DNA of 56,634 nucleotides, from contig NIVC01000927.1 of the NCBI GenBank assembly GCA_002269645.1, positions 347,601 to 404,234 on the forward strand. The letters run 5' to 3'. Origin of the DNA: Macrostomum lignano (Eukaryota). A program made the position numbers and the translations under genes. A model generated the notes under the pieces. It was not told the origin of the DNA, did no database searches, and was given only the letters and a program-made list of their open reading frames with translations. Within the stretch, counting starts at the first letter, position 1; every line of letters starts with the position of its first letter. This document shows, piece by piece, positions 145 through 53,490 of the stretch.

Positions 145-600
145 AAGAGAGAGAAGAGAATGAAGAGATAGATAGGGAAGACAGGGGTGAAAAAATGAAG
201 AAAATGGAGGAGAGAGAGGAAGAAAGGGAAGAAGAGACACGGGAGATGGGAGAGGTAAGAGAGAAGAGAGGAAGCAGGAGAGATGAGACAGGGGAAAGTG
301 GAGAGAGGAGAGTTGGGGGGGATGGAGAGGGGTATGGGGAGGGGGAGAGGAGATATGAGAGGGAAGCGGGAGTTAGAGGAGAAAGGGAAGAAAGGGGAGA
401 GGAGAAATGGGAAGATGAGAGGGAAGAGAGGAGAGATGAGAGGGAAGAGAGGGGAGAGGAGAGATGAGATGGAAGAGAGGAGAGATGAGAGGAAGAGAGG
501 AGAGATGAGAGGGAAGAGAGGAGAGATGAGAGGGAGAGAGGAGAGATGAGAGGAAGAGGGGAGAGATGAGAGGGAAGAGAGGGAGAGGAGAGATGAGAGG
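145..600 (+). repeat. GA-rich low-complexity/minisatellite tract
   Basis: Units such as GAGAGGAGAGATGAGAGGGAA; the overlapping E/R/G-rich or S/L/P-rich ORFs are repeat translations. Confidence 0.9.
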
Positions 601-958
601 TGAAAGGCCAGTGAATAAAGAGAGAATCTGAATTGTGAATAGCTTTACCTAAATAAAGTGCCATCCCAGCGATCGAAAAATGTTTTCGATAAAGAATTTA
701 AATGAGTAGAGAATTTTTATCAACTTTCACCAATAACCCAATTGCCCAATTTCGAATGGTTAATATCAATAATTCGTACTCAAAAATTGCTTAAATTTCA
801 TCTCTTTTTCATCAGAAACAAAAGGACTCTCCTTTGAATTCACCAAATCCACAAAAAAAGAATTTTTCTGCTCTGAAACCGTCTTACAACCCTCGTAGTT
901 TTATTTTATTAACGTGGGAATTTTATTTTCGGAGATTCGGTCGTTAACCACTAGGAGA

Positions 959-3900
959 CACACATGTCTTGAAGCCCTTTAAAGGGGAAAATAAAGTCAG
1001 CCTGAAATGACAATAATTTACACTCTCATCTGGACCTTAGCACAGCATATGTGCAATTTCAAAAAAATCTCCCGAGCTATCTCTGATTTACAGCACTTTA
1101 TTACCATATGACCTAATTACTATTAGTTTTCAATATGCGTGATGCGAAAAATGAGTGTCTACATGAGTTTGTGAAATTTGAAAAATATGATCCTAAAACA
1201 AGTCAGAAACTTTTCATTATAATTCATAGGTATGCCATCACCTTACAAAGTCCAAAGTATAAAGTATAAATTGAAACATCAATGAATAATTGTGACAAAA
1301 TGTAACAAAAAACAGCATAAACACTCGTACAGTACAGTACAGAGAATGCTACATAAAAGTGGACAAAGAAGCAATGCGCAAAATTGTGCGTGAGTGATGC
1401 AAGGCATGGAGGGCATATTATTCTAGATATTTTTCTATCGCTTGCTTTTGAGTTGTAGCTATTATTCCCTCCTCATACGTAGCTACCATCTCATTGGCTG
1501 TGAGCCTGTAAATTTGCTGCACAGCTCTCGTATTCATGCCATTTTGGCCCTTAGCATATCCTTCTATTAAATTCTGCTGAGTTTTCAAAGGAAGCTATTC
1601 CCTTTCCATGATGATGGGTAAGAACAAGGACTTCTGCGATATAAGTTTACCATAGAAAGAATTAAATTAAGGTTTCCACCAGCTACCTAATGTATTCCTA
1701 TCATTAATTCAATAATAAATAAAAGAAAAAATAACTTTAGGGTCCTATCGGGATAAGACAATAGCTAGCGATCATCTAGTCTTTTTTAGATTTCATTTTC
1801 TAGTGAACTAACAATCTCTATGCATGCATTGCAAAGCTGGAATGGAATTTTGAAATGCGGACATTGTATTTCGGTGGGTTGAATGGGTAAGATAACACGC
1901 TTTTTGAAAGATTCCAATTATTTACTTCCTGTTTATGTTCTGTTTAATTTCGCTTTCCACTCTACAGGGTCTGACTAAGAACTATTTGTTCATCCCAATA
2001 AAGAAAAATGTATAATCCTAATTCGCAGTCTTGATTGATTTAGCTAGTTCACATTTTGTTTAAGCATGACGAGAGCAGTATGCAACAACACACTTGCGCA
2101 GTCGATCTGGATACGATGGATGATGAAAATCGATCCGAAAGTCTTGCCACATGCTGCTGAAATCGTGGTGTGCAGTCTCAACCACCTGCTCAGACCAGAA
2201 GCCAAGTCCCTTCTTAGGTTCTCCAGCTAGATTGGACATGTTCAAAAACTGGACAACGTGGTCAATAACAGCGTGGACTTTCGGGGTGACGCGGATTCCA
2301 AGATCGATATAGGCTTGTTCGAATGCCCGGACTCGATTCTCAAAGTCTCCACACACACTCATACCAAAGCACGAGGCCTTCACATCGCGGAAGCAGCGTA
2401 GGGCGTGAGCTACAGGCATTGCCGAAAACACATTGTGCTGAGCCAGCATTCCAATCAAAATGTCGACGCCATTTAGAAGACACTCGCAGGCGTTCCCGGC
2501 AAAGTTCCCACCGTTCTGCAATGGTCGTCGAAGGCCAAGCTGCTGTAGCCAGTCATCGGTGCTTATCTGACAGTCTTCGAGTCCTCGCAGTTGAGTGTCC
2601 AGTTCTTCGAATAGTCGATTGGTCACGCCAAGCAAGAGATGCAGCCCCATTGGTGGAATGGCCTGGAGCACCATCGTGCTGTCTGGAACTTCGAGCAGAG
2701 GAGGACGCACACAGTTTTTGAAAGCAGCAGCAGACACGTTGCGCGGCGCTTTTTCTTCTACAGTGCGCTGGTACTCAAATGCCTGTAACCGAATACCGCC
2801 GATCGATCTCAACACGTTCGTGCGGTCTGGATTAGAAAAATCGATCCTGGCAGTCTCGCACCAAGGGCAGGGATGGGTGCTGCTGCAGCACTGAATTCCC
2901 AGGATCGCATTCGAAATTTTCATATCAACTGCTGCACAGAATGAAAATCCTTGCAAATTAAGAAGATTCAGGATCTGCTGCAGATTATCGTAGGACTCGG
3001 AAACAGATTCGGCAATGGCAAGCAGGAGCAGTTTACGGACTCCTCCATCCTCAAAATGGAAACGGCATGCGCCTTCTGCGTACGTGCTGCGACTTCCGGT
3101 AGGTTGATCTTTTAAACCTTGAGCAGGCACAATGCTAACACAAAACTTTAAGAAGCCGCCTCCGCTGTCGATGCCAACTTTAATCAATGCGCCGTCATCT
3201 GCACTGACCTGACGACGTGCCATCACTCTGTCAATCAGAGCCAGAGGATCAGTGCAGAATACAATGCTGCGCATTTCCCTTTTTCCTTTGGCACAGTCCA
3301 TCTCTAGGTTAGTCAACTCAAACAAATCATCTAGAGCAGAGTCGATGGCGCTCAGTTTGCTGCGCAAATTTGGCTCAATGCTTTTGCGTCCTTTCCATGC
3401 TCGAAAAAATTGAGCGGCCAACTTAGTTTGCCGACCGCTCAAACACAGCGTCTGCTGGAATCGGCTGAATTCCTCTGCTGGTACGGCGCAGCCACCTCTC
3501 ATTGATGTAGAACTACCAGCCCGTTGCCCAACACACACTGTAAGATCACGACCTCTAGTTGCCAATTGAAATCTAGAGTTTGAGCCGGTGGAAGCAGCCT
3601 TAGCTTTAATCACGTCACTTGCGTGGATTTCGGCACCTCGACGGTCTAGCGACAACTTACTGAATAGATTTTCTCGTCGCTGTGTTTGCGTGCAGTAGTG
3701 AGGCAAACCTCTGCCAACCATTGAGTGGCAGCGCTGGCAGATGACAACAGGTTGTGCCGGTGGCAGACCATGATCTGGATCCGAACACGCGGGTCGTCCA
3801 AGCGAATGTGGCTCTGGTTTCCATGTTCCCAGTCCTTTCCCAATCGGGTTGAACCGGGCAGTCTCACATATTTTGCAAGCACAACTGCTGGACTGTCGCG

Positions 3901-4774
3901 TAATCTTTGTTGGGCTCACCTTTACGACCTCAGAGGAGTTCGGCAAAACATTCGGCGCTTTTATGCCCTTGTCGACGTCAGCCAGAAGCTTGTTGCATCG
4001 GGCACAGAGTGCTGCAGGTAGCTGCTCATCATTCGCATTGTAGTTGGGCAAAAAGTGTGCCTGAATGCGTTTCAGCGAGGCATTACCTATTCGTTGCATT
4101 GATGAGCCCTTTTTGTAGCACAACAAGCAGATCTTGAGGCGATTTTCTTCATGTGATAGTGCATGCGTTGCATGGCTCATTTCTTTATACATGTATGGCA
4201 AGGTGAGTAGAAATATTGAAAGTAGGCTTGAAGCTCACTATGGACTGCAAGTCAAGTCACTAACAAATACAGGTTGAGCTTGGTTTGTGAAAAGAAATCG
4301 TGCCTTGCAGAATTTATCATCAATTGATTTTATTATACAAGTAGGAAGCATACAACCAACATGCCTATAACAGTCTAGAGTCAAGTACACTGGACAGAGC
4401 ATACTCAAGCTCATGGGTCAGAGGGACCAAATTTGAGTACATTGGCAAGCCACACAACCCAAACCCCCGCTGAGCTACATGAAACTTTATATTTATGTGT
4501 TGCATCATCTAAGTTGGTTTACTATAATTGAAATCGGCTATCACTGGTTTAACTTACATGTACCTTGATCTACGGTTCTACCCATATGTACAATCAATGC
4601 AAATTATGCATTATCACAAGCTATGGAATGAAGTACTTGTAGAATGGAGATAGCTCGGTAGATTTTTTTAAAATTGCACGTATACCTTGCTACTAAGGTT
4701 CAGGTGAATGCATAAATCACTGTCATTTGAGGCTGACTTTATTTTCACCTTGAGAAGGCTTCAGGACATGTGTG
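959..4774 (-). mobile_element. Complete autonomous DNA transposon, Transib/RAG1-like/Chapaev-related (3,816 bp)
   Basis: The left end at 959 reads CACACATGTCTTGAAGCC and the right end (4774, reverse complement) reads CACACATGTCCTGAAGCC. Imperfect TIRs span ~959-1083 and ~4647-4774 (about 80% identical by hand alignment). Identical 5-bp flanks GGAGA lie at 954-958 and 4775-4779 (TSD). One long internal transposase ORF. Confidence 0.93.
2060..4192 (-). CDS. DDE transposase of the Transib/RAG1/Chapaev type with an N-terminal Cys/His zinc-binding region (~710 aa; first ATG 4192, alternative ATG 4180)
   Basis: Uninterrupted ORF; the ORF-track start at 4201 is a TTG. Catalytic-type motifs: KVGIDSGGGFLK (D1), AVDMK followed by C-x2-C at +19 (HPCPWC), GLHLLLG, GNFAGN, KVHAVIDH (H-x4-H) and WSEQVVETAH (E). 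Their order and spacing match the RAG1/Transib core. The N-terminus has H-x7-C-x2-C, P-x3-C-x2-C and CKICETAR. Confidence 0.9.
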   Translation of the reverse strand: MYKEMSHATHALSHEENRLKICLLCYKKGSSMQRIGNASLKRIQAHFLPNYNANDEQLPAALCARCNKLLADVDKGIKAPNVLPNSSEVVKVSPTKITRQSSSCACKICETARFNPIGKGLGTWKPEPHSLGRPACSDPDHGLPPAQPVVICQRCHSMVGRGLPHYCTQTQRRENLFSKLSLDRRGAEIHASDVIKAKAASTGSNSRFQLATRGRDLTVCVGQRAGSSTSMRGGCAVPAEEFSRFQQTLCLSGRQTKLAAQFFRAWKGRKSIEPNLRSKLSAIDSALDDLFELTNLEMDCAKGKREMRSIVFCTDPLALIDRVMARRQVSADDGALIKVGIDSGGGFLKFCVSIVPAQGLKDQPTGSRSTYAEGACRFHFEDGGVRKLLLLAIAESVSESYDNLQQILNLLNLQGFSFCAAVDMKISNAILGIQCCSSTHPCPWCETARIDFSNPDRTNVLRSIGGIRLQAFEYQRTVEEKAPRNVSAAAFKNCVRPPLLEVPDSTMVLQAIPPMGLHLLLGVTNRLFEELDTQLRGLEDCQISTDDWLQQLGLRRPLQNGGNFAGNACECLLNGVDILIGMLAQHNVFSAMPVAHALRCFRDVKASCFGMSVCGDFENRVRAFEQAYIDLGIRVTPKVHAVIDHVVQFLNMSNLAGEPKKGLGFWSEQVVETAHHDFSSMWQDFRIDFHHPSYPDRLRKCVVAYCSRHA

Positions 4775-5354
4775 GGAGAATGTTGCTTTACAGTACATAT
4801 GCACATAGCATGCCTGTGGGGCATTGCAAGCTCTAGCAATAATATAGCTATAGGTTAATTTGTGTGCTTCTTTTGCTTGGACCAAAAATGCAATAAGTCT
4901 TCTGTGAGTCATTTTGAGACTCTGCTCAAGCTCTATACGAGTAAGCAATGGTGGGGTCGTGTATCGTATGGGGTTTTTAAGTTTCCAACTGTATTTCTGG
5001 TCCGCAACTAGTGGCTCTGGATACAATCGATATTATAAAACTGCGCTTCATTGCTTTCAAAGCATGCGAAAATTGGTCAATTCCGCCGACGCCAAATTGA
5101 GTATACGGAAAAAGGGAGTTTGATCGTTAATATCTCTCTGTTGAGACAGAATTAGTATTGAGTTTTGTTCCATTCTCTGGCGACTTTGATCACTAAAACA
5201 GGTGAGACAGCTCATTTTTGTACGATTCGGCAACGGTTCAATCTTAAAGCTAAGAAGCGTGACTCTATGTTTCATATTCATTGCGAGCACTATGAGAAAT
5301 CAAGCCAATAGGACAAAAGTCCAATACGTGACAGTCGCAACAATTGAGTCCTTA

Positions 5355-5820
5355 TCAGTGACAATCCTTAAGAGTGACAGTCTTCCTCAATGACAGTCCC
5401 TATCAGTGACATTCCTCATTAGTGACAGTCCTCATCAGTGACAGTATTCATCAGCCACAGTCCTTATCAGTGCCAGTCCTTATCAGTGACAGTCCTTATC
5501 AGTGACAGTCCTTATCAGTGACATTCCTCATCAATGACAGTCCCTATCAGTGACATTCCTCATTAGTGACAGTCCTTATCAGTGACAGTCTTCATCAGTG
5601 ACAGTCCTTATCAGTGACAGTCCTTATCAGTGACAGTCCTTTCAGTGACAGTTTTCTTCAGTGACAGTCTTCATCAGTGACAGTCTTCTTGAGTGACAGT
5701 CCTTATCAGTGACAGTCCTTATCAGTGACAGTCCTTATCAGTGACAGTCATTATCAGTGACAGTTTTTTATCTATGACAGTCCTTATCAATGACAGCCAT
5801 TATCAGTGTCCGAATCAGTG
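5355..5820 (+). repeat. 16-bp minisatellite (GACAGTCCTTATCAGT)n, array 1
   Basis: Directly visible tandem units. Confidence 0.95.
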
Positions 5821-6265: not shown

Positions 6266-6449
6266 AGTCCTTATCAGTGACAGTCCTTATCAGTGACAGT
6301 CCTTATCAGTGACAGTCCTTATCAGTGACAATCCTTATCAGTGACAGTCCTTATCAGTGACAGTCCTTATCAGTGACAGTCCTTATCAGTGACAGTCCTT
6401 ATCAGTGACAGTCCTTATCAGTGACAGTCCTTATCAATGACAGTCCCTA
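6266..6449 (+). repeat. 16-bp minisatellite (GACAGTCCTTATCAGT)n, array 2
   Basis: Same unit and orientation as array 1. Confidence 0.95.
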
Positions 6450-26200: not shown

Positions 26201-29200
26201 CATTGATTTATTTTTTCATTTGTAACACAGCCAGGAGGGAGACATTCCAGAGTTACCAAAAATTATTTAGTGCAAAGGGTCGGCAAACTCCTGCCCTCGG
26301 GTCCTTTGAAACTTCACAATAGCAATCCGGCTCGCTTAAGATTTGTGTCTTCTCTCTCCCCCTCTCTGTCCTCTCTTCCCTCTTCTCTGTTCTCTCTCCC
26401 CCCTCTTCTCTGTTCTCTCTCCCCCCTCTCTGTCCTCTCTTCCCTCTTCTCTGTTCTCTCCCCCCTCTTCTCTGTTCTCTCTCCCCCCTCTCTGTCCTCT
26501 CTTCCCTCTTCTCTGTTCTCTCTCCCCCCTCTCTGTCCTCTCTTCCCTCTTCTCGTCTCTTCCCTCTTCTCTGTTCTCTCTCCCCTCTTCTCTCTTATCT
26601 CTCCCCTCTTTTCTTCTCTCTGCTCTCTTCTCTGTTCTCTCTCCCCTCTTCTCTGCTCTCTCCCCTCTTCTCTCTTATCTCTCCCCTCTTTGTTCTCTCT
26701 GCCCTCTTCTCTGTTCTCTCTCCCCTCTTCTCTCTTATCTCTCCCCTCTTCTCTGTTCTCTCTCCCATCTTCTCTGTTCTCTCTCACCTCTTCTCTCTTA
26801 TCTCTCCCCTCTTCTCTGTTCTCTCTCTCATCTTCTCTGTTCTCTCTCCCCTCTTCTCTGTTCTCTCTCTCATCTTCTCTGTTCTCTCTCCCCTCTTCTC
26901 TGTTCTCTCTCCCCTCTTCTCTGTTCTCTCTCCCCTCTTCTCTGTTCTCTCTCTCATCTTCTCTGTTCTCTCTCCCCTCTTCTCTGTTCTCTCTTCCCTC
27001 TTCTCTGTTCTCTCTCCCCTCTTCTCTGTTCTCTCTCCCCTCTTCTCTGTTCTCTCTCTCATCTTCTCTGTTCTCTCTCCCCTCTTCTCTCTTATCTCTC
27101 CCCTCTTTGCTCTCTCTTCCCTCTTCTCTGTTCTCTCTCCCCTCTTCTCTGTTCTCTCTTCCCTCTTCTCTGTTCTCTCTGCCCTCTTTTTTATTCTCAT
27201 CTGGCCTGCAGCCACAAGCTGTATTCTTTTTCTGGCAGTTGAGGTAAAAGTTTGCCGACTCCTTGTGTGGCCAAACTCAGTTTACTAATGAGTGCGCCCT
27301 ATTCACCTGTACAGGTGAAACTCGGCGCCCTGGACGCCACTGTGCACACATCGATGGCCGCCCGCTACGGTATCCAAGGCTATCCGACTATTAAAATGTT
27401 CCCGGCCGGCCGAAAAACTGGCGAAGCCGTCGAATACGACGGCGGCCGCACCTCGGACGATATTGTCCGGTGGGCTCTGGACAAACTGGCCGGTAAGTAA
27501 TGCATCAAATTTAATCCAAGTTTGTACTAATTCACATGTACTTTTAATAATAGGATAGGCCACTCAGGGATATTGGCACTCAGATGGCAAGGCTTGGGGG
27601 AATTGCTAAGATAGCAAGGCTTACGGGGGGATTGCTGAGATGTCAAGGCTTACGGGGGGATTGCTGAGATGGCAAGGCTTACGGGGGGATTGCTGAGATG
27701 TCAAGGTTTACGGGGAGAATTGCTGAGATGGCAAGGCTGAGGTCAGAAGCTACATGTAGTCTATTCAATTTTTTTTATTAAATTCTCTGTTGGCTCCCCA
27801 ACAGGGGGCGCTGATTGCTAGTTTCTAGCTATGTTTAGTATCTGTCTGTACACTAATTAGATGACGACGCATCAAAAGCATTTTTTCTTAGAAGCAGGGA
27901 GCTGTGCGCATCCTCGCGCACTTTAAGCGACGTTGTCGCACAACCGGCGAGAGGCATTACTGCCCATTCCACCGGCCCCTCCTGAGCAAGGATACGTACG
28001 CAATCACAGGAGTGTACAGCGGCCCTAACTTAATTTATCGTTAGGCCTGTACACTTCACTGTGACTTGGGGGTTGGCCATCAAGGGCGTTAATTACACGA
28101 GCAGAGCCAAGCCAAGATTCCAATTTAGCCCCAAATTAATGTGACTGCACTTGGAATCGAGCCTGGGCCGCTGGCACATCCACTGGGCTACGGTCCCCTT
28201 CATCAAAAGCATGGCTAATCCTGCCTTTAACTACTCGTCTGAAGCTAATCCATATTAAATTCAATCGGTCTCCGCAGACTCCATCGCTCCGCCAGAAATT
28301 GTTGAACTAACTGACCAGACTGTGCTGCAGGACCACTGCCTTGACAAGCAGCTGTGCGTTGTATCCGTGCTGCCTCAGCTGCTCGATTGCCAGTCCGACT
28401 GTCGCAACGGCTACCTGAAGATACTGAAAGAGATTGGCGAGAAGTACAAGAAATTAATGTGGGGCTGGGTCTGGTTCCAAGGCGGCGATATGCAGACGCA
28501 GGTAAAATACGGGCGATTGACGAACTACCCACTTTCCACTTTTCATTTCTGTTGTTTCTTCTAATTTAAAATTTTCTGTTCTAATTTTTTCTTTTTTTTC
28601 GCATCCAGCTGGAGGAGGCTTTCGGTATCGGCGGTTTCGGCTACCCAGCCATGGCTGTTGTGAACGCCAAGAAGATGAAGTTCTCCCTGCTGAAAGGCCC
28701 ATTCACCTTTGACGGTATTAACGAGTTCGTGCGCAGCCTGTCGCTCGGCCGCGGCTCCACCGAGCCGGTGCGCGGCGCCAGCATCCCGGAGGCTAAGAAG
28801 CGAGACCCGTGGGACGGCAAGGACGCCAAGGTGAGCGCTCATTTTTGGCTAGCTAGCTTCAGGGTTCTTCAGGAGCCTCTGGAAACCCTGCTAGCTCTCC
28901 CAATTCTTCAGGACCCACTGCAAACACCCAATAGCCCCCGATTTTTTCAGGACCCACTGCGAACACCCCGATAGCTCCCTATTTATCAGGACCCATTGCG
29001 AACACCCCGCTAGCCCCCGATTCTTCAGGACCCGCTGTGAACACCCCGATAGCTCCCTATTTATCAGGACCCATTGCGAGCACCCCGCTAGCCCCCGATT
29101 TTTCAGGACCCATTGCGAACACCCCGCTAGCCCCCGATTCTTCAGGACCCATTGCGAACACCCCGATAGCCCCCGATTTTTTCAGGACCCACTGCGAACA

Positions 29201-32200
29201 CCCCGATAGCCCCCGATTTTTTCAGGACCCACTGCGAACACCCCGATAGCCCCCGATTTTTCAGGACCCATTGCGAACACCCCGATAGCCCCCGATTTTT
29301 TCAGGACCCACTGCGAACACCCCGATAGCCCCCGATTTTTCAGGACCCATTGCGAACACCCCGATAGCCCCCGATTTTTTCAGGACCCACTGCGAACACC
29401 CCGATAGCCCCGATTTTTTCAGGACCCACTGCGAACACCCCGATAGCCCCCGATTTTTCAGGACCCATTGCGAACACCCCGATGGCCCCCGATTTTTTCA
29501 GGACCCACTGCGAACACCCCAATAGCCCCCGATTTTTCAGGACCCATTGCGAACACCCCGATAGCCCCCGATTTTTCAGGACCCATTGCGAACACCCCGA
29601 TAGCCCCCGATTTTTTCAGGACCCACTGCGAACACCCCGATAGCCCCCGATTTTTCAGGACCCATTGCGAACACCCCGATAGCCCCCGATTTATCAGGAC
29701 CCATTGCGAACACCCCGATAGCCCCCGATTCTTCAGGACCCATTGCGAACACCCCGATAGCCCCCGATTTTTCAGGACCCATTGCGAACACCCCGATAGC
29801 CCCCGATTTTTCAGGACCCATTGCGAACACCCCGATAGCCCCCGATTTTTCAGGACCCATTGCGAACACCCCGATAGCTCCCTATTTATCAGGACCCATT
29901 GCGAACACCCCGCTAGCCCCCGATTCTTCAGGACCCGCTGTGAACACCCCGATAGCCCCCGATTTTTCAGGACCCATTGCGAACACCCCGATAGCCCCCG
30001 ATTTTTTCAGGACCCACTGCGAACACCCCGATAGCCCCCGATTTTTTCAGGACCCACTGCGAACACCCCGATAGCCCCCGATTTTTTCAGGACCCACTGC
30101 GAACACCCCGATAGCCCCCGATTTTTTCAGGACCCACTGCGAACACCCCGATAGCCCCCGATTTTTCAGGACCCATTGCGAACACCCCGATAGCCCCCGA
30201 TTTTTTCAGGACCCACTGCGAACACCCCGATAGCCCCCGATTTTTCAGGACCCATTGCGAACACCCCGATAGCCCCCGATTTTTCAGGACCCATTGCGAA
30301 CACCCCGATAGCCCCCGATTTTTTCAGGACCCACTGCGAACACCCCGATAGCCCCCGATTTTTCAGGACCCATTGCGAACACCCCGATAGCTCCCGATTT
30401 ATCAGGACCCATTGCGAACACCCCGATAGCCCCCAATTCTTCAGGACCCATTGCGAACACCCCGATAGCCCCCGATTTTTCAGGACCCATTGCGAACACC
30501 CCGATAGCCCCCGATTTTTCAGGACCCATTGCGAACACCCCGATAGCCCCCGATTTTTCAGGACCCATTGCGAACACCCCGATAGCTCCCTATTTTTCAG
30601 GACCCATTGCGAACACCCGCTAGCCCCCGATTCTTCAGGACCCGCTGTGAACACCCCGATAGCCCCCGATTTTCAGGACCCATTGTGAACACCCCGATAG
30701 CTCCCTATTTATCAGGACCCATTGCGAACACCCCGATAGCTCCCTATTTATCAGGACCCATTGCGAACACCCCGCTAGCCCCCGATTCTTCAGGACCCGC
30801 TGTGAACACCCCGATAGCCCCCGATTTTTCAGGACCCATTGCGAACACCCCGATAGCCCCCGATTTTTCAGGACCCATTGCGAACACCCCGATAGCCCCC
30901 GATTTTTCAAGACCCATTGCGAACACCCCGATAGCCCCCGATTTTTTTAGGACCCACTGCGAACACCCCGATAGCCCCCGATTTTTCAGGACCCATTGCG
31001 AACACCCCGATAGCCCCCGATTTTTCAGGACCCATTGCGAACACCCCGATAGCTCCCTATTTATCAGGACCCATTGCGAACACCCCGATAGCTCCCTATT
31101 TATCAGGACCCATTGCGAACACCCCGCTAGCCCCCGATTTTTCAGGACCCATTGCGAACACCCCGATAGCCCCCGATTTTTTCAGGACCCACTGCGAACA
31201 CCCCGATAGCCCCCGATTTTTCAGGACCCATTGCGAACACCCCGATAGCTCCCGATTTATCAGGACCCATTGCGAACACCCCGATAGCCCCCAATTCTTC
31301 AGGACCCATTGCGAACACCCCGATAGCCCCCGATTTTTCAGGACCCATTGCGAACACCCCGATAGCCCCCGATTTTTCAGGACCCATTGCGAACACCCCG
31401 ATAGCCCCCGATTTTTCAGGACCCATTGCGAACACCCCGATAGCTCCCTATTTTTCAGGACCCATTGCGAACACCCCGCTAGCCCCCGATTCTTCAGGAC
31501 CCGCTGTGAACACCCCGATAGCCCCCGATTTTCAGGACCCATTGTGAACACCCCGATAGCTCCCTATTTATCAGGACCCATTGCGAACACCCCGATAGCT
31601 CCCTATTTATCAGGACCCATTGCGAACACCCCGCTAGCCCCCGATTCTTCAGGACCCGCTGTGAACACCCCGATAGCCCCCGATTTTTCAGGACCCATTG
31701 CGAACACCCCGATAGCCCCCGATTTTTCAGGACCCATTGCGAACACCCCGATAGCCCCCGATTTTTCAAGACCCATTGCGAACACCCCGATAGCCCCCGA
31801 TTTTTTTAGGACCCACTGCGAACACCCCGATAGCCCCCGATTTTTCAGGACCCATTGCGAACACCCCGATAGCCCCCGATTTTTCAGGACCCATTGCGAA
31901 CACCCCGATAGCTCCCTATTTATCAGGACCCATTGCGAACACCCCGATAGCTCCCTATTTATCAGGACCCATTGCGAACACCCCGCTAGCCCCCGATTCT
32001 TCAGGACCCGCTGTGAACACCCCGATAGCCCCCGATTTTTCAGGACCCATTGCGAACACCCCGATAGCCCCCGATTTTTCAGGACCCATTGCGAACACCC
32101 CGATAGCCCCCGATTTTTCAAGACCCATTGCGAACACCCCGATAGCCCCCGATTTTTCAAGACCCATTGCGAACACCCCGATAGCCCCCGATTTTTCAAG

Positions 32201-32640
32201 ACCCATTGCGAACACCCAATAGCCCCCGATTTTTCAGGACCCACTGCGAACACCCGCTAGCTCTCCCAATTCTTTAGGAGCCGCTGTGAACACCCCGCGG
32301 CCGCTAGCCCCCGATTCTTCAGGACCCGCTGTGAACACCCCGCTAGGTCTCCCAATTCTTCAGGACCCGCTGCGAACACCCCGCTAGCTCTCCCGATTTT
32401 TCAGAACTCGCTGAAAACCCCTGCTAGGTCCTAATTCTTCAGGTGCCGCTGCAAACACCCCTAGCTCCCCTGACTCTTAGCAAACCCCAACAACTTGTTA
32501 GTAACAAGAACCAATAATCGATAGCTCAATAATTATTGCTTCTCTCTGAGGTTCAGCTTCCCACTGTTGAGGATGACGGCATTGACGTGTCAGACATTGT
32601 GCTGGACACCATCGGCAAAGACAAGAAGCAGGAGCTTTGA
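23273..32640 (+). CDS. PDIA6: Protein disulfide-isomerase A6 (P5), 7 exons, 440 aa, isoform ending KQEL
   Basis: Exons: 23273-23300, 25390-25782, 25896-26089, 27315-27492, 28278-28501, 28609-28830, 32557-32640 (1323 nt, phases consistent). Signal peptide [19 protein letters not shown], two thioredoxin domains with WCGHC, a Gly-rich linker, a b-domain with GGFGYPAM, and an acidic tail ending KKQEL*. Confidence 0.95.
24320..24935. mobile_element. MITE/foldback element with ~100-bp TIRs in PDIA6 intron 1
   Basis: 24320-24421 (GAAGTGCTTAGGCCTATCCCCACGGTCCCATGCTAATAATTCCAATTTTATCCAC...) is the near reverse complement of 24839-24935. The arms contain subrepeats and the core is AT-rich. TA flanks are possible, but the TSD is not certain. 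Confidence 0.8.
26345..27200 (+). repeat. CT-rich ~21-bp minisatellite in PDIA6 intron 3
   Basis: Unit CCCCTCTTCTCTGTTCTCTCT. Confidence 0.95.
27580..27740 (+). repeat. 29-bp minisatellite in PDIA6 intron 4
   Basis: Unit GCTGAGATGTCAAGGCTTACGGGGGGATT. Confidence 0.85.
27890..28198 (-). mobile_element. Possible tRNA-derived SINE-like element
   Basis: The minus strand begins GGGGACCG-TAGCCCAGTGG (A-box-like) and continues to GGCTCGATTCC (B-box-like), but the A-B spacing is only ~17 nt. The 3' boundary is uncertain. Confidence 0.3.
28885..32470 (+). repeat. 39-bp minisatellite (~3.6 kb) filling PDIA6 intron 6
   Basis: Unit CAGGACCCATTGCGAACACCCCGATAGCCCCCGATTTTT; all ORFs here are repeat translations. 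Confidence 0.97.

Positions 32641-35982: not shown

Positions 35983-51171
<15,189 letters not shown>

Positions 51172-52914: not shown

Positions 52915-53490
<576 letters not shown>

What the first reader, a model, noticed from the sequence alone, without database searches (positions are those of the whole stretch)
954..4779. Complete, potentially active RAG1-related transposon with CAC termini and a perfect 5-bp TSD
Seen in the sequence: both ends start CACACATGTC, ~125-bp TIRs, identical GGAGA flanks, and one uninterrupted ~710-aa ORF with all three acidic catalytic positions plus the C-x2-C and H-x4-H zinc ligands. Established: CAC termini with 5-bp TSDs characterise Transib and RAG/ProtoRAG transposons, whereas Chapaev elements are described with 4-bp (Chapaev3: 3-bp) TSDs. 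Inference: this is a young autonomous element with Transib/RAG-type target duplication but a Chapaev-like protein. It may represent a poorly described branch between Chapaev, Transib and RAG1L.
Basis: partly seen in the sequence, partly recalled or inferred. Interest (0 to 1): 0.9.

Follow-up and report, generated by a model that had tools for sequence, protein, structure and literature searches.

The report
Intact Chapaev-type transposon in a flatworm
This is a complete, recently mobile "cut-and-paste" jumping gene of the already described Chapaev group (distant relatives of the RAG1 antibody-gene recombinase) in the flatworm Macrostomum lignano; it is a good candidate for lab tests but not a new kind of element.

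Summary
Window 959-4774 is a 3,816-bp element with CACACATGTC at both ends and about 135-bp imperfect inverted repeats. It is flanked by a perfect GGAGA duplication and carries one intact 710-aa ORF on the minus strand.

The window is Macrostomum lignano contig NIVC01000927.1. The assembly holds seven copies at five independent sites. Their target-site duplications (TSDs) are 5, 5, 5, 4 and 4 bp, so the element is not strictly Transib-like.

Copies differ by at most 1.5%. pN/pS between the three subfamilies is 0.10-0.22. Two copies share a stop codon yet sit at different sites, so the family moved recently.

The predicted fold matches only RAG1, RAG1L and Transib (Foldseek E down to 7.6e-13). 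A family profile aligns D423, C442/C445, H640/H645 and E672 with RAG1 D708, C727/C730, H937/H942 and E962.

The N-terminus is a Chapa zinc-finger domain. It scores best against Repbase Chapaev-2_HM, -1_AA, -5_HM and -1_HM (43-77 bits); every other lineage scores 28 bits or less. There is no RAG2-like gene.

The protein family is very large: 7,066 clusters at 50% identity. Relatives elsewhere show 4-bp and 3-bp duplications.

Verdict: a new, probably active member of the known Chapaev group with a variable 4-5-bp duplication, not a bridging lineage.

The parts
954..958 (.). Left copy of the 5-bp target-site duplication, GGAGA
   Evidence: Read directly. Identical in the homeologous or allelic copies L001 and L002.
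959..4774 (-). Whole Chapaev-group transposon, 3,816 bp; the transposase gene reads on the minus strand
   Evidence: Similarity to the four other independent M. lignano insertions (about 98% identity) starts and stops exactly at these two bases.
959..1092 (+). Terminal inverted repeat at the 3' side of the gene; begins CACACATGTCTTGAAGCC
   Evidence: Inverted-repeat arms I1 and I2, alignment, terminus scan.
1063..1075 (+). Subterminal motif AAAAATCTCCCGA, 105 nt from the end; candidate transposase-binding site
   Evidence: The same motif, AAAAA[AT]CTNCCGA, lies 103-108 nt from all four ends of this family and of the 49%-identical second M. lignano family in L006.
2060..4192 (-). Single-exon transposase CDS, 710 aa plus stop (P0001)
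   Evidence: ORF list. Exact match to the annotated M. lignano protein.
3848..4153 (-). Chapa (NZD-like) N-terminal zinc-finger domain, residues about 14-115: HEENR..CLLC....CARC....CACKIC
   Evidence: BLASTP against the Chapaev-1_HM Chapa domain gives 33% identity and E = 4e-10. The family N-terminal profile scores 43-77 bits on Chapaev-2_HM, -1_AA, -5_HM and -1_HM. There is a sub-threshold zf-AD hit at residues 25-75.
2063..3355 (-). RAG1-type catalytic core, residues about 280-710, with pLDDT mostly 70-96
   Evidence: Structure model. Foldseek's top 44 PDB hits are all RAG1, RAG1L or HzTransib. Supported also by hmmsearch and hhalign against RAG1.
3167..3169 (-). D342 codon (GIDSGGGF); inferred first catalytic Asp, equivalent to RAG1 D600
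   Evidence: Invariant or nearly invariant in the family. The equivalence to D600 is inferred from the motif and the fold match; it was not aligned residue by residue.
2924..2926 (-). D423 codon (VDMK); second catalytic Asp, equivalent to RAG1 D708
   Evidence: Invariant in 86 sequences. Aligned to YDEK of RAG1.
2858..2869 (-). C442-x2-C445 zinc ligands, equivalent to RAG1 C727/C730
   Evidence: Invariant. Aligned to CTLCD of RAG1.
2258..2275 (-). H640-x4-H645 zinc ligands, equivalent to RAG1 H937/H942
   Evidence: Nearly invariant. Aligned to HKTLAH of RAG1.
2177..2179 (-). E672 codon (SEQVVETAH); catalytic Glu, equivalent to RAG1 E962
   Evidence: Invariant. Aligned to the E of 'GNES' in RAG1.
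4638..4774 (-). Terminal inverted repeat at the 5' side of the gene; reads CACACATGTCCTGAAGCC inward
4655..4667 (-). Subterminal motif AAAAATCTACCGA, 108 nt from the end
4775..4779 (.). Right copy of the 5-bp target-site duplication, GGAGA
   Evidence: Read directly. One homeologous copy (L003) has lost one G here.

Best explanation
The feature is an autonomous, single-gene, cut-and-paste DNA transposon of the Chapaev group. Chapaev is classed as CMC-Chapaev in RepeatMasker terms and as a clade of the Transib superfamily by Kapitonov and Koonin (2015). The host genome is the flatworm Macrostomum lignano.

[quoted passage not shown] Inferred mechanism, by analogy with RAG1/2 and HzTransib. The transposase binds the about 135-bp inverted repeats, probably through the conserved terminal CACA..TGTCYTGAAG block and the subterminal AAAAATCTNCCGA motif. 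It then nicks next to the terminal CAC and releases the element, probably through hairpins on the flanking DNA. Finally it joins the two 3'-OH ends to target DNA with a 5-nt or sometimes 4-nt stagger, and repair of that stagger gives the duplication.

Shown: anatomy, copy structure, homology, motif equivalence and selection on the ORF. Inferred: the chemistry, the binding sites and current activity.
For: Anatomy:
- Ends, inverted repeats, duplication and ORF are confirmed.

Source and copies:
- The window is M. lignano NIVC01000927.1.
- There are seven gene copies at five independent sites, each with its own flanking duplication: GGAGA, TATTA, TACCC, TTAA, TGAC.

Recent activity:
- Three subfamilies differ by 1.2-1.5%; within a subfamily the copies differ by 0.16-0.24%.
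- pN/pS between subfamilies is 0.10-0.22, for example 15 synonymous against 5 non-synonymous changes.
- L007 and L008 share R172* yet lie at different sites, each with its own TSD. They were therefore probably moved in trans by another copy's enzyme.

RAG1-type core:
- The Foldseek top 44 PDB hits are exclusively RAG1, BbRAG1L or HzTransib, with E from 7.6e-13 to 7.6e-5; the next hit is Hermes at 1.2e-2.
- The 86-sequence profile hits RAG1L at E = 4.5e-6 and zebrafish RAG1 at 1.6e-4.
- hhalign against mouse RAG1 core gives E = 4.6e-5 and aligns D423/D708, C442,C445/C727,C730, LH518, H640,H645/H937,H942 and E672/E962. The recalled RAG1 sequence was first validated against the PDB.

Chapaev membership:
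- The motifs C(2)C, LH and H(4)H are given as Chapaev hallmarks in PMC4079192. All three are present and invariant.
- The Chapa domain matches.
- There is no second ORF and no RAG2-like gene.

Conserved ends:
- Related families start CACAGTTGTCCTGAAGG, CACAGGTAGTCTGAAA, CACACGTGG and CACAACTT.
Against: - The published Chapaev hallmark is a 3-4-bp duplication (PMC4079192). Three of five insertions here have 5 bp.
- No bona fide Chapaev catalytic-core sequences (Repbase or RepeatPeps) were available. Placement in Chapaev therefore rests on the N-terminal domain, the motifs and the ends, not on a core phylogeny.
- hhalign probability against RAG1 is only 68.6%, and the first catalytic Asp was not aligned by sequence.
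- The structure model is mediocre overall (mean pLDDT 66.7; residues 115-236 are disordered).
- No transcription, excision or empty-site evidence was obtained.
- The window copy itself is present in all three near-identical homeologous or allelic contigs.
Confidence: 0.85

Rival explanations
1. One reading: a distinct lineage lying between Chapaev, Transib and RAG1L. It would combine a Chapaev-like protein with a genuinely Transib/RAG-type 5-bp target duplication.
For: - Three of five insertions have exact 5-bp duplications.
- The second M. lignano family may also give 5 bp (TCTGT) if its ends are read as CT(A)CAGCG.
- By fold the closest solved structures are RAG1 and RAG1L rather than HzTransib.
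- The N-terminal profile scores PMRAG1L (27.6 bits) above several Chapaev subgroups.
Against: - Two of five insertions have 4 bp. Relatives have 4 bp and 3 bp.
- The N-terminal domain scores 43-77 bits on four named Chapaev families, well above RAG1L.
- There is no Pfam RAG1 hit and no RAG2-like ORF.
- The family is huge.
- The literature already treats TSD length as labile: 2-5 bp in the CMCT clade (PMC12730594) and 5, 3 or 2 bp inside Transib (bioRxiv 10.64898/2026.08.26.747230).
Confidence: 0.07
2. The transposase always makes 5-bp duplications. The two 4-bp cases (L004, L005) would then be 5-bp duplications that each lost one base at the right junction after insertion.
For: - A 1-bp loss at exactly this junction is seen in the homeologous copy L003 (GGAGA to GAGA).
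- In both 4-bp cases the base just outside the left duplication is C (CTTAA, CTGAC). Loss of one C at the right junction would explain both.
Against: - It needs two independent deletions at the same position, both in the same subfamily and not in a homopolymer run. The L003 case is in a run of G.
- Related elements on other contigs show 4-bp and 3-bp duplications.
- Published Chapaev elements give 3-4 bp.
Confidence: 0.15
3. It is a member of another CAC-ended superfamily (EnSpm/CACTA or Mirage) rather than Chapaev.
For: CAC...GTG ends and the C(2)C and H(3-4)H motifs are shared by the whole CMC/CMCT clade (PMC12730594).
Against: - No hit to any Pfam family was found, including no plant-type EnSpm transposase family.
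- The Chapa domain, reported only from Chapaev and RAG1/RAG1L (PMC4411706; bioRxiv 10.64898/2026.01.24.700457), is present.
- Duplications are 4-5 bp, not 2-3 bp.
- There is one ORF, not two.
Confidence: 0.03
4. It is a domesticated, fixed host gene derived from a transposase and is no longer mobile.
For: - The window copy is present in all three homeologous or allelic contigs.
- The ORF is under purifying selection.
Against: - There are five independent genomic sites with intact inverted repeats and their own duplications.
- Near-identical pairs sit at different sites (0.16% and 0.24% apart).
- Stop-codon copies were still mobilised.
Confidence: 0.01

Closest known systems
Chapaev transposons, RING-less subgroup represented in Repbase by Chapaev-1_HM, -2_HM and -5_HM (Hydra) and Chapaev-1_AA (Aedes) (Kapitonov & Jurka 2007; alignment in PMC4411706, Additional file 5)
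   Same: - 5'-CAC...GTG-3' ends.
- A single roughly 700-aa transposase.
- An N-terminal Chapa zinc-finger domain of the HEENR-x-CxxC...PxxIC..C...CxCxIC type (43-77 bits).
- C(2)C, LH and H(4)H motifs.
- 4-bp duplications in two of five copies and in relative L033.
   Different: - Three of five insertions have 5-bp duplications, outside the published 3-4-bp range.
- The host is a flatworm, and this family is not described in the papers I could read.
- The core domain was not compared with Repbase sequences.
Transib transposons (for example HzTransib; PDB 6pqy)
   Same: - RAG1-type DDE core fold (Foldseek E = 7.6e-5).
- CAC-initiated ends.
- 5-bp duplication in some copies.
- Single ORF.
   Different: - No detectable sequence match to HzTransib.
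- Canonical Transib transposases lack a Chapa/NZD domain (PMC4411706; bioRxiv 10.64898/2026.01.24.700457).
- The terminus is CACACAT rather than CACAATG.
- The duplication is not constantly 5 bp.
RAG1 and RAG1L (V(D)J recombinase; ProtoRAG/TransibSU transposons; PDB 6dbw, 6b40)
   Same: - Best structural matches (E from 7.6e-13 to 2.5e-9).
- Significant profile matches.
- Equivalent D, D, E, C2 and H2 residues.
- Homologous N-terminal zinc-finger domain.
- CAC heptamer-like terminus.
   Different: - About 13% identity.
- No RAG2-like partner gene.
- No RING finger.
- No Pfam RAG1 hit.
- Both ends share the same architecture, so no 12/23-type asymmetry was seen.
Chapaev3 (Merrow, Garfield, Conan; PMC4079192)
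   Same: CAC ends, a single-exon transposase and the same three motifs.
   Different: - The Chapaev3 N-terminus is of the C-N-x-D-x-FCYICG type and scores only 9-25 bits.
- Chapaev3 makes a strict TWA 3-bp duplication between A and T, which is not seen here.

Membership tests
Chapaev (CMC-Chapaev) | Inverted repeats with invariable 5'-CAC ... GTG-3' termini (PMC4079192) | tested here: met
   The element reads CACACATGTC...GACATGTGTG. Four related families also start CACA. The second M. lignano family starts CAG.
Chapaev (CMC-Chapaev) | 3- to 4-bp target-site duplication (PMC4079192) | tested here: inconclusive
   The five independent insertions give 5, 5, 5, 4 and 4 bp. Relatives give 4 bp (L033) and 3 bp (L021). 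The range overlaps the published one but is not identical to it.
Chapaev (CMC-Chapaev) | Transposase motifs C(2)C, LH and H(4)H in a DDE core (Yuan & Wessler 2011, as cited in PMC4079192) | tested here: met
   C442-x2-C445, L517-H518 and H640-x4-H645, with D342, D423 and E672, are invariant or nearly invariant in 86 sequences.
Chapaev (CMC-Chapaev) | N-terminal Chapa zinc-finger domain (PMC4411706) | tested here: met
   BLASTP E = 4e-10 against Chapaev-1_HM. The profile scores 76.8, 48.8, 44.4 and 42.9 bits on Chapaev-2_HM, -1_AA, -5_HM and -1_HM. The reference sequences were taken from a machine-read PDF and contain some OCR errors.
Chapaev (CMC-Chapaev) | Catalytic core groups with Repbase/RepeatPeps Chapaev in a phylogeny | not testable with these tools
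   No Chapaev core sequences were available. The supplements held only trees or N-terminal alignments.
Transib (canonical) | Constant 5-bp target-site duplication | tested here: not met
   Two of five insertions have 4 bp.
Transib (canonical) | Transposase core with recognisable sequence similarity to Transib/RAG1 core, and no Chapa domain | tested here: not met
   There is no Pfam RAG1 hit and no sequence hit to HzTransib; only remote profile and fold similarity was found. A Chapa domain is present.
RAG-like transposons (ProtoRAG / TransibSU) | Adjacent RAG1-like and RAG2-like genes within the inverted repeats | tested here: not met
   There is one ORF only. No other ORF in the remaining 1.1 kb (959-2059) exceeds 56 aa.
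RAG1/Transib/Chapaev clade (Transib superfamily sensu PMC4411706; CMCT sensu PMC12730594) | [quoted passage not shown] | tested here: met
   Foldseek, hmmsearch and hhalign residue equivalences.
EnSpm/CACTA and Mirage | 2-3-bp duplications; EnSpm-type transposase families | tested here: not met
   Duplications are 4-5 bp. No Pfam transposase family is hit.

The most novel reading that the evidence does not exclude
Target-duplication length may be set by subfamily within one 98.5%-identical family. Subfamilies A and B gave 5 bp in all three insertions. Subfamily C gave 4 bp in both of its insertions.

The C transposases differ from the window (A) protein at only five shared positions: T123K, P356S, I433L, D532E and G581A. 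I433L and G581A also occur in the 5-bp subfamily B, so only T123K, P356S and D532E are specific to C. The ends differ by a few changes.

If real, this would be a natural handle on what fixes the strand-transfer stagger in RAG1-type transposases. [quoted passage not shown]
Probability: 0.12. Interest if true: 0.6.

Novelty: new member of a known kind. Interest (0 to 1): 0.3.

Why it matters
[quoted passage not shown] A 2026 preprint (10.64898/2026.01.24.700457) states that experimental validation of Chapa-domain function in Chapaev systems is lacking.

An intact, evidently recently mobile Chapaev element in a transgenesis-capable model flatworm is therefore a practical starting point. Its ends are defined and five mapped integration sites are in hand. 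It could be used for:
- biochemical tests of hairpin formation;
- tests of what sets the stagger length;
- tests of the role of the Chapa domain;
- possibly a new gene-delivery vector.

As a genomic finding it is ordinary. It is one family of a very large, already named group, and the 5-bp duplication falls within the 2-5-bp range already noted for the wider CMC/Transib clade.

Tried and rejected
- Pfam scans of the protein and of ten relatives found no family above threshold, only recurrent weak zf-AD hits.
- A single-sequence PDB search found nothing meaningful.
- The 8-sequence profile gave only E = 0.099 to RAG1L. A deeper 86-sequence profile was needed.
- A second word-indexed homologue search with the 86-sequence alignment returned only 9 proteins and no genome-derived relatives. 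It was not useful.
- Cluster look-up of ten remote relatives gave no organism names; nearly all are metagenome or SRA contigs.
- Marine-metagenome contigs of the P0015 family could not be used for duplications. The assembler joined the same flank to either end, and the one contig with both flanks has non-matching flanks and is probably chimeric.
- I looked for Chapaev core sequences in paper supplements. Only Newick trees and an N-terminal alignment were held, and Yuan & Wessler 2011 is not held.
- No further copies or MITE derivatives were found in the rest of the window or in the fetched loci.
- An RSS-like heptamer-spacer-nonamer reading of the ends was rejected. The A-rich block AAAATAAAG lies 22 nt after CACACAT at both ends, but it is not conserved in related families.

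Full report
**1. What is in the sequence**

GGAGA lies at 954-958 and again at 4775-4779.
- The element itself is 959-4774 (3,816 bp). It begins CACACATGTC and ends GACATGTGTG.
- The repeat finder reports two adjoining inverted-repeat arms: 959-1040/4693-4774 (82 nt, 83%) and 1038-1092/4638-4692 (55 nt, 82%). Together they make about 135 bp with one 3-bp indel.
- The 18-nt terminus occurs only at these two places in the 56.6-kb window, against 0.07 expected from shuffles.
- One long ORF lies on the minus strand at 2060-4201. The eukaryotic start is the ATG at 4192, giving 710 aa.
- The remaining 1.1 kb (959-2059) has no ORF above 56 aa, so there is no second, RAG2-like gene.
- The coding part is 47-54% G+C; the non-coding arms are 34-38%.

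**2. Where it comes from and how many copies there are**

The 710-aa protein is an annotated hypothetical protein of the flatworm Macrostomum lignano, gene cluster Mlig018049, assembly GCA_002269645.1. The window is contig NIVC01000927.1: 8,192 bp of it are 100% identical to locus L001.

Two more contigs (L002, L003) carry the same insertion in the same flanks at 98.8-99.9% identity. They are homeologous or allelic duplicates, not new insertions. In L003 the right GGAGA has lost one G.

Four further gene copies lie in unrelated flanks. The similarity in each stops exactly at the CAC...GTG ends.

| Locus | Subfamily | Flanking duplication | Length | ORF |
|---|---|---|---|---|
| Window (L001-L003) | A | GGAGA | 5 bp | intact, 710 aa |
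| L008 | B | TATTA | 5 bp | R172* stop |
| L007 | B | TACCC | 5 bp | R172* stop |
| L004 | C | TTAA | 4 bp | intact, 710 aa |
| L005 | C | TGAC | 4 bp | intact, 710 aa |

An adjacent 5-bp repeat cannot arise from a 4-bp one by chance, and no consistent shift of the element boundary turns both 4-bp cases into 5 bp. So the family shows both lengths. The only alternative is that both subfamily C copies lost one base at the right junction, which I rate at about 0.15.

**3. Age and selection**

- The five insertions fall into three subfamilies. They are 1.2-1.5% apart from each other and 0.16-0.24% apart within B and within C.
- All copies align over the 2,133-nt CDS without indels.
- Between subfamilies there are about 11-15 synonymous and 5-8 non-synonymous differences, so pN/pS is 0.10-0.22. 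The lineages therefore diverged while the protein was under selection, as expected for an active transposase.
- Both B copies share R172* (CGA to TGA) yet sit at different sites, each with its own duplication. They differ by only 0.16%. They probably moved after the ORF was broken, using transposase from another copy.
- This argues for recent activity and against domestication.

**4. What the protein is**

Pfam has no model for this protein. The only hit is a sub-threshold zf-AD match at residues 25-75, which recurs in relatives.

The family is very large. A profile of eight sequences finds 7,066 clusters at 50% identity (947 at E <= 1e-30), most matching end to end. Most of the ten looked up come from metagenome or SRA assemblies.

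An AlphaFold model has mean pLDDT 66.7. Residues 280-710 are mostly at 70-96 and the 115-236 linker is disordered. In a Foldseek search of the PDB the first 44 hits are all RAG1, amphioxus RAG1L or Helicoverpa Transib, with E from 7.6e-13 to 7.6e-5 and TM up to 0.58. The next hit is Hermes at 1.2e-2.

Sequence-level support:
- An 86-sequence profile hits RAG1L at E = 4.5e-6 and zebrafish RAG1 at E = 1.6e-4.
- hhalign against the mouse RAG1 core gives E = 4.6e-5 over 229 columns, probability 68.6%.

Residue equivalences from these alignments:

| This protein | Mouse RAG1 |
|---|---|
| D423 | D708 |
| C442 / C445 | C727 / C730 |
| L517-H518 | the LH of 'DALHCDIG' |
| H640 / H645 | H937 / H942 |
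| E672 | E962 |

D342 (GIDSGGGF) as the counterpart of D600 (CDGMGDV) is inferred from the motif and the fold, not from a sequence alignment.

**5. Which known group it belongs to**

Published Chapaev hallmarks are CAC...GTG ends, 3-4-bp duplications and the motifs C(2)C, LH and H(4)H (PMC4079192). Chapaev transposases also carry an N-terminal Chapa zinc finger, shared only with RAG1/RAG1L (PMC4411706; bioRxiv 10.64898/2026.01.24.700457).

Additional file 5 of PMC4411706 gives the Chapa-domain alignment. Residues 14-115 of the window protein (HEENRLKICLLC...PAALCARC...SSCACKICETAR) align with Chapaev-1_HM at 33% identity, E = 4e-10.

A profile of the N-termini of the 86 relatives gives these scores:

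| Reference sequence | Bits |
|---|---|
| Chapaev-2_HM | 76.8 |
| Chapaev-1_AA | 48.8 |
| Chapaev-5_HM | 44.4 |
| Chapaev-1_HM | 42.9 |
| PMRAG1L | 27.6 |
| Best Chapaev3 (Chapaev3-1_SM) | 24.7 |
| Chapaev-1_BF (RING type) | 16.7 |
| Human RAG1 | 7.6 |

So the family sits in the already named RING-less Chapaev subgroup. The weak zf-AD hits fit the 2026 preprint's report that the first zinc-finger module of this domain resembles ZAD.

I could not test the core domain against Repbase Chapaev sequences because none were available.

**6. Ends and duplications in relatives**

- A second M. lignano family (P0003, 49% identity, locus L006) has 216-bp, 99%-identical inverted repeats that start CAGCGCG. 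It may have a 5-bp duplication, TCTGT, but this is ambiguous.
- Both M. lignano families carry AAAAA[AT]CTNCCGA 103-108 nt from each of their four ends. This is a candidate internal binding site.
- A family from marine metagenomes (P0015, 35-38% identity) ends CACAGTTGTCCTGAAGG. This is visibly related to the window's CACACATGTCYTGAAGCC.
- Two complete elements on metagenome contigs end CACAGGTAGTCTGAAA with a TTAT (4-bp) duplication (L033, a 13.9-kb contig) and CACACGTGGATC with GGT (3 bp; L021, a short contig and less reliable).
- Duplication length in this clade therefore runs from 3 to 5 bp. This agrees with statements that the CMC/Transib clade makes 2-5-bp duplications (PMC12730594) and that the length is labile even inside Transib (bioRxiv 10.64898/2026.08.26.747230).

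**7. How it most likely works**

Shown:
- a RAG1-type DDE/zinc core;
- a Chapa domain;
- conserved CACA termini;
- staggered 4-5-bp target duplications;
- recent mobilisation, including in trans.

Inferred from RAG1/2 and HzTransib biochemistry (established knowledge):
- the transposase binds the ends as a synaptic dimer;
- it nicks beside CAC and forms hairpins on the flanking DNA to release blunt transposon ends;
- the 3'-OH ends then attack the target 4-5 nt apart.

Roles for the terminal block and the subterminal motif as binding sites are also inference.

**8. Verdict**

The element is young, autonomous, RAG1-related and Chapaev-like. It is not a bridging lineage, and it does not have a fixed Transib-type duplication.
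- It is a new member of a known kind.
- Its practical value is as an intact candidate for the first functional study of a Chapaev transposase and its Chapa domain.
- The most novel reading not excluded is that 4-bp versus 5-bp duplication tracks subfamily. Against the window (A) protein, C has five shared amino-acid differences, of which three (T123K, P356S, D532E) are absent from subfamily B. With five insertions this pattern has about a 0.2 chance of arising by accident, so I give it a low probability.

Noticed in passing
window 5347-5808 and 6266-6446; also 28865-32461, 44842-47367, 37524-38398, 52916-53490 and many others: The window is packed with minisatellites: 53 Tandem Repeats Finder rows. 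Two arrays of a 16-bp unit (AGTCCTTATCAGTGAC) lie just right of the element. There is also a 3.6-kb array of a 39-bp unit and two (CTAT)n tracts of 0.6-0.9 kb.
   Followed up: no
window 212-600: A GA-rich low-complexity tract with strong GC skew (0.6-0.7) lies immediately left of the insertion site.
   Followed up: no
L007 and L008 (M. lignano NIVC01001009.1 and NIVC01000997.1), codon 172 of the transposase: Both subfamily B copies carry the same R172* (CGA to TGA) stop. They sit at different sites, each with its own 5-bp duplication, and differ by 0.16%. This suggests trans-mobilisation of a broken copy.
   Followed up: partly
L003 (NIVC01003948.1), right junction: The homeologous or allelic copy of the window insertion has lost one G of the right GGAGA. 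Junction bases can therefore be lost after insertion.
   Followed up: yes
L006 4503-7870 (NIVC01000691.1): This is a second M. lignano Chapaev-like family (P0003, 702 aa, 49% identity). Its inverted repeats are 216 bp and 99% identical, and start CAGCGCG rather than CAC. It shares the subterminal AAAAAATCTGCCGA motif at the same distance from the ends as the window family.
   Followed up: partly
L010-L019 (Tara Oceans and other marine metagenome contigs): Ten or more contigs from different marine samples carry a 773-aa relative at 99.6-99.8% nucleotide identity, with ends CACAGTTGTCCTGAAGG. This looks like a very young, abundant family in some marine animal. The same flank appears joined to either end in different contigs, which is an assembly artefact of the near-identical inverted repeats.
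   Followed up: partly
protein family as a whole (Pfam scans): This transposase family has 7,066 clusters at 50% identity, yet none of the 11 members scanned matches any Pfam-A model above threshold. Five of those eleven give sub-threshold zf-AD hits at the N-terminus.
   Followed up: partly
P0065 (UniRef A0A1I8I628, 2,033 aa): This protein is named as an Arf-GAP/ANK/PH protein (ACAP2-like; organism not checked). It contains three stretches matching this transposase. It may be a gene-model fusion with an inserted element or, less likely, an exaptation.
   Followed up: no
L009 1-2042 and 2357-5741 (ENA metagenome contig): A Chapaev-like element (648-aa transposase, end CACAACTTCGG) lies directly beside a retroelement pol gene (RVT_1).
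   Followed up: no
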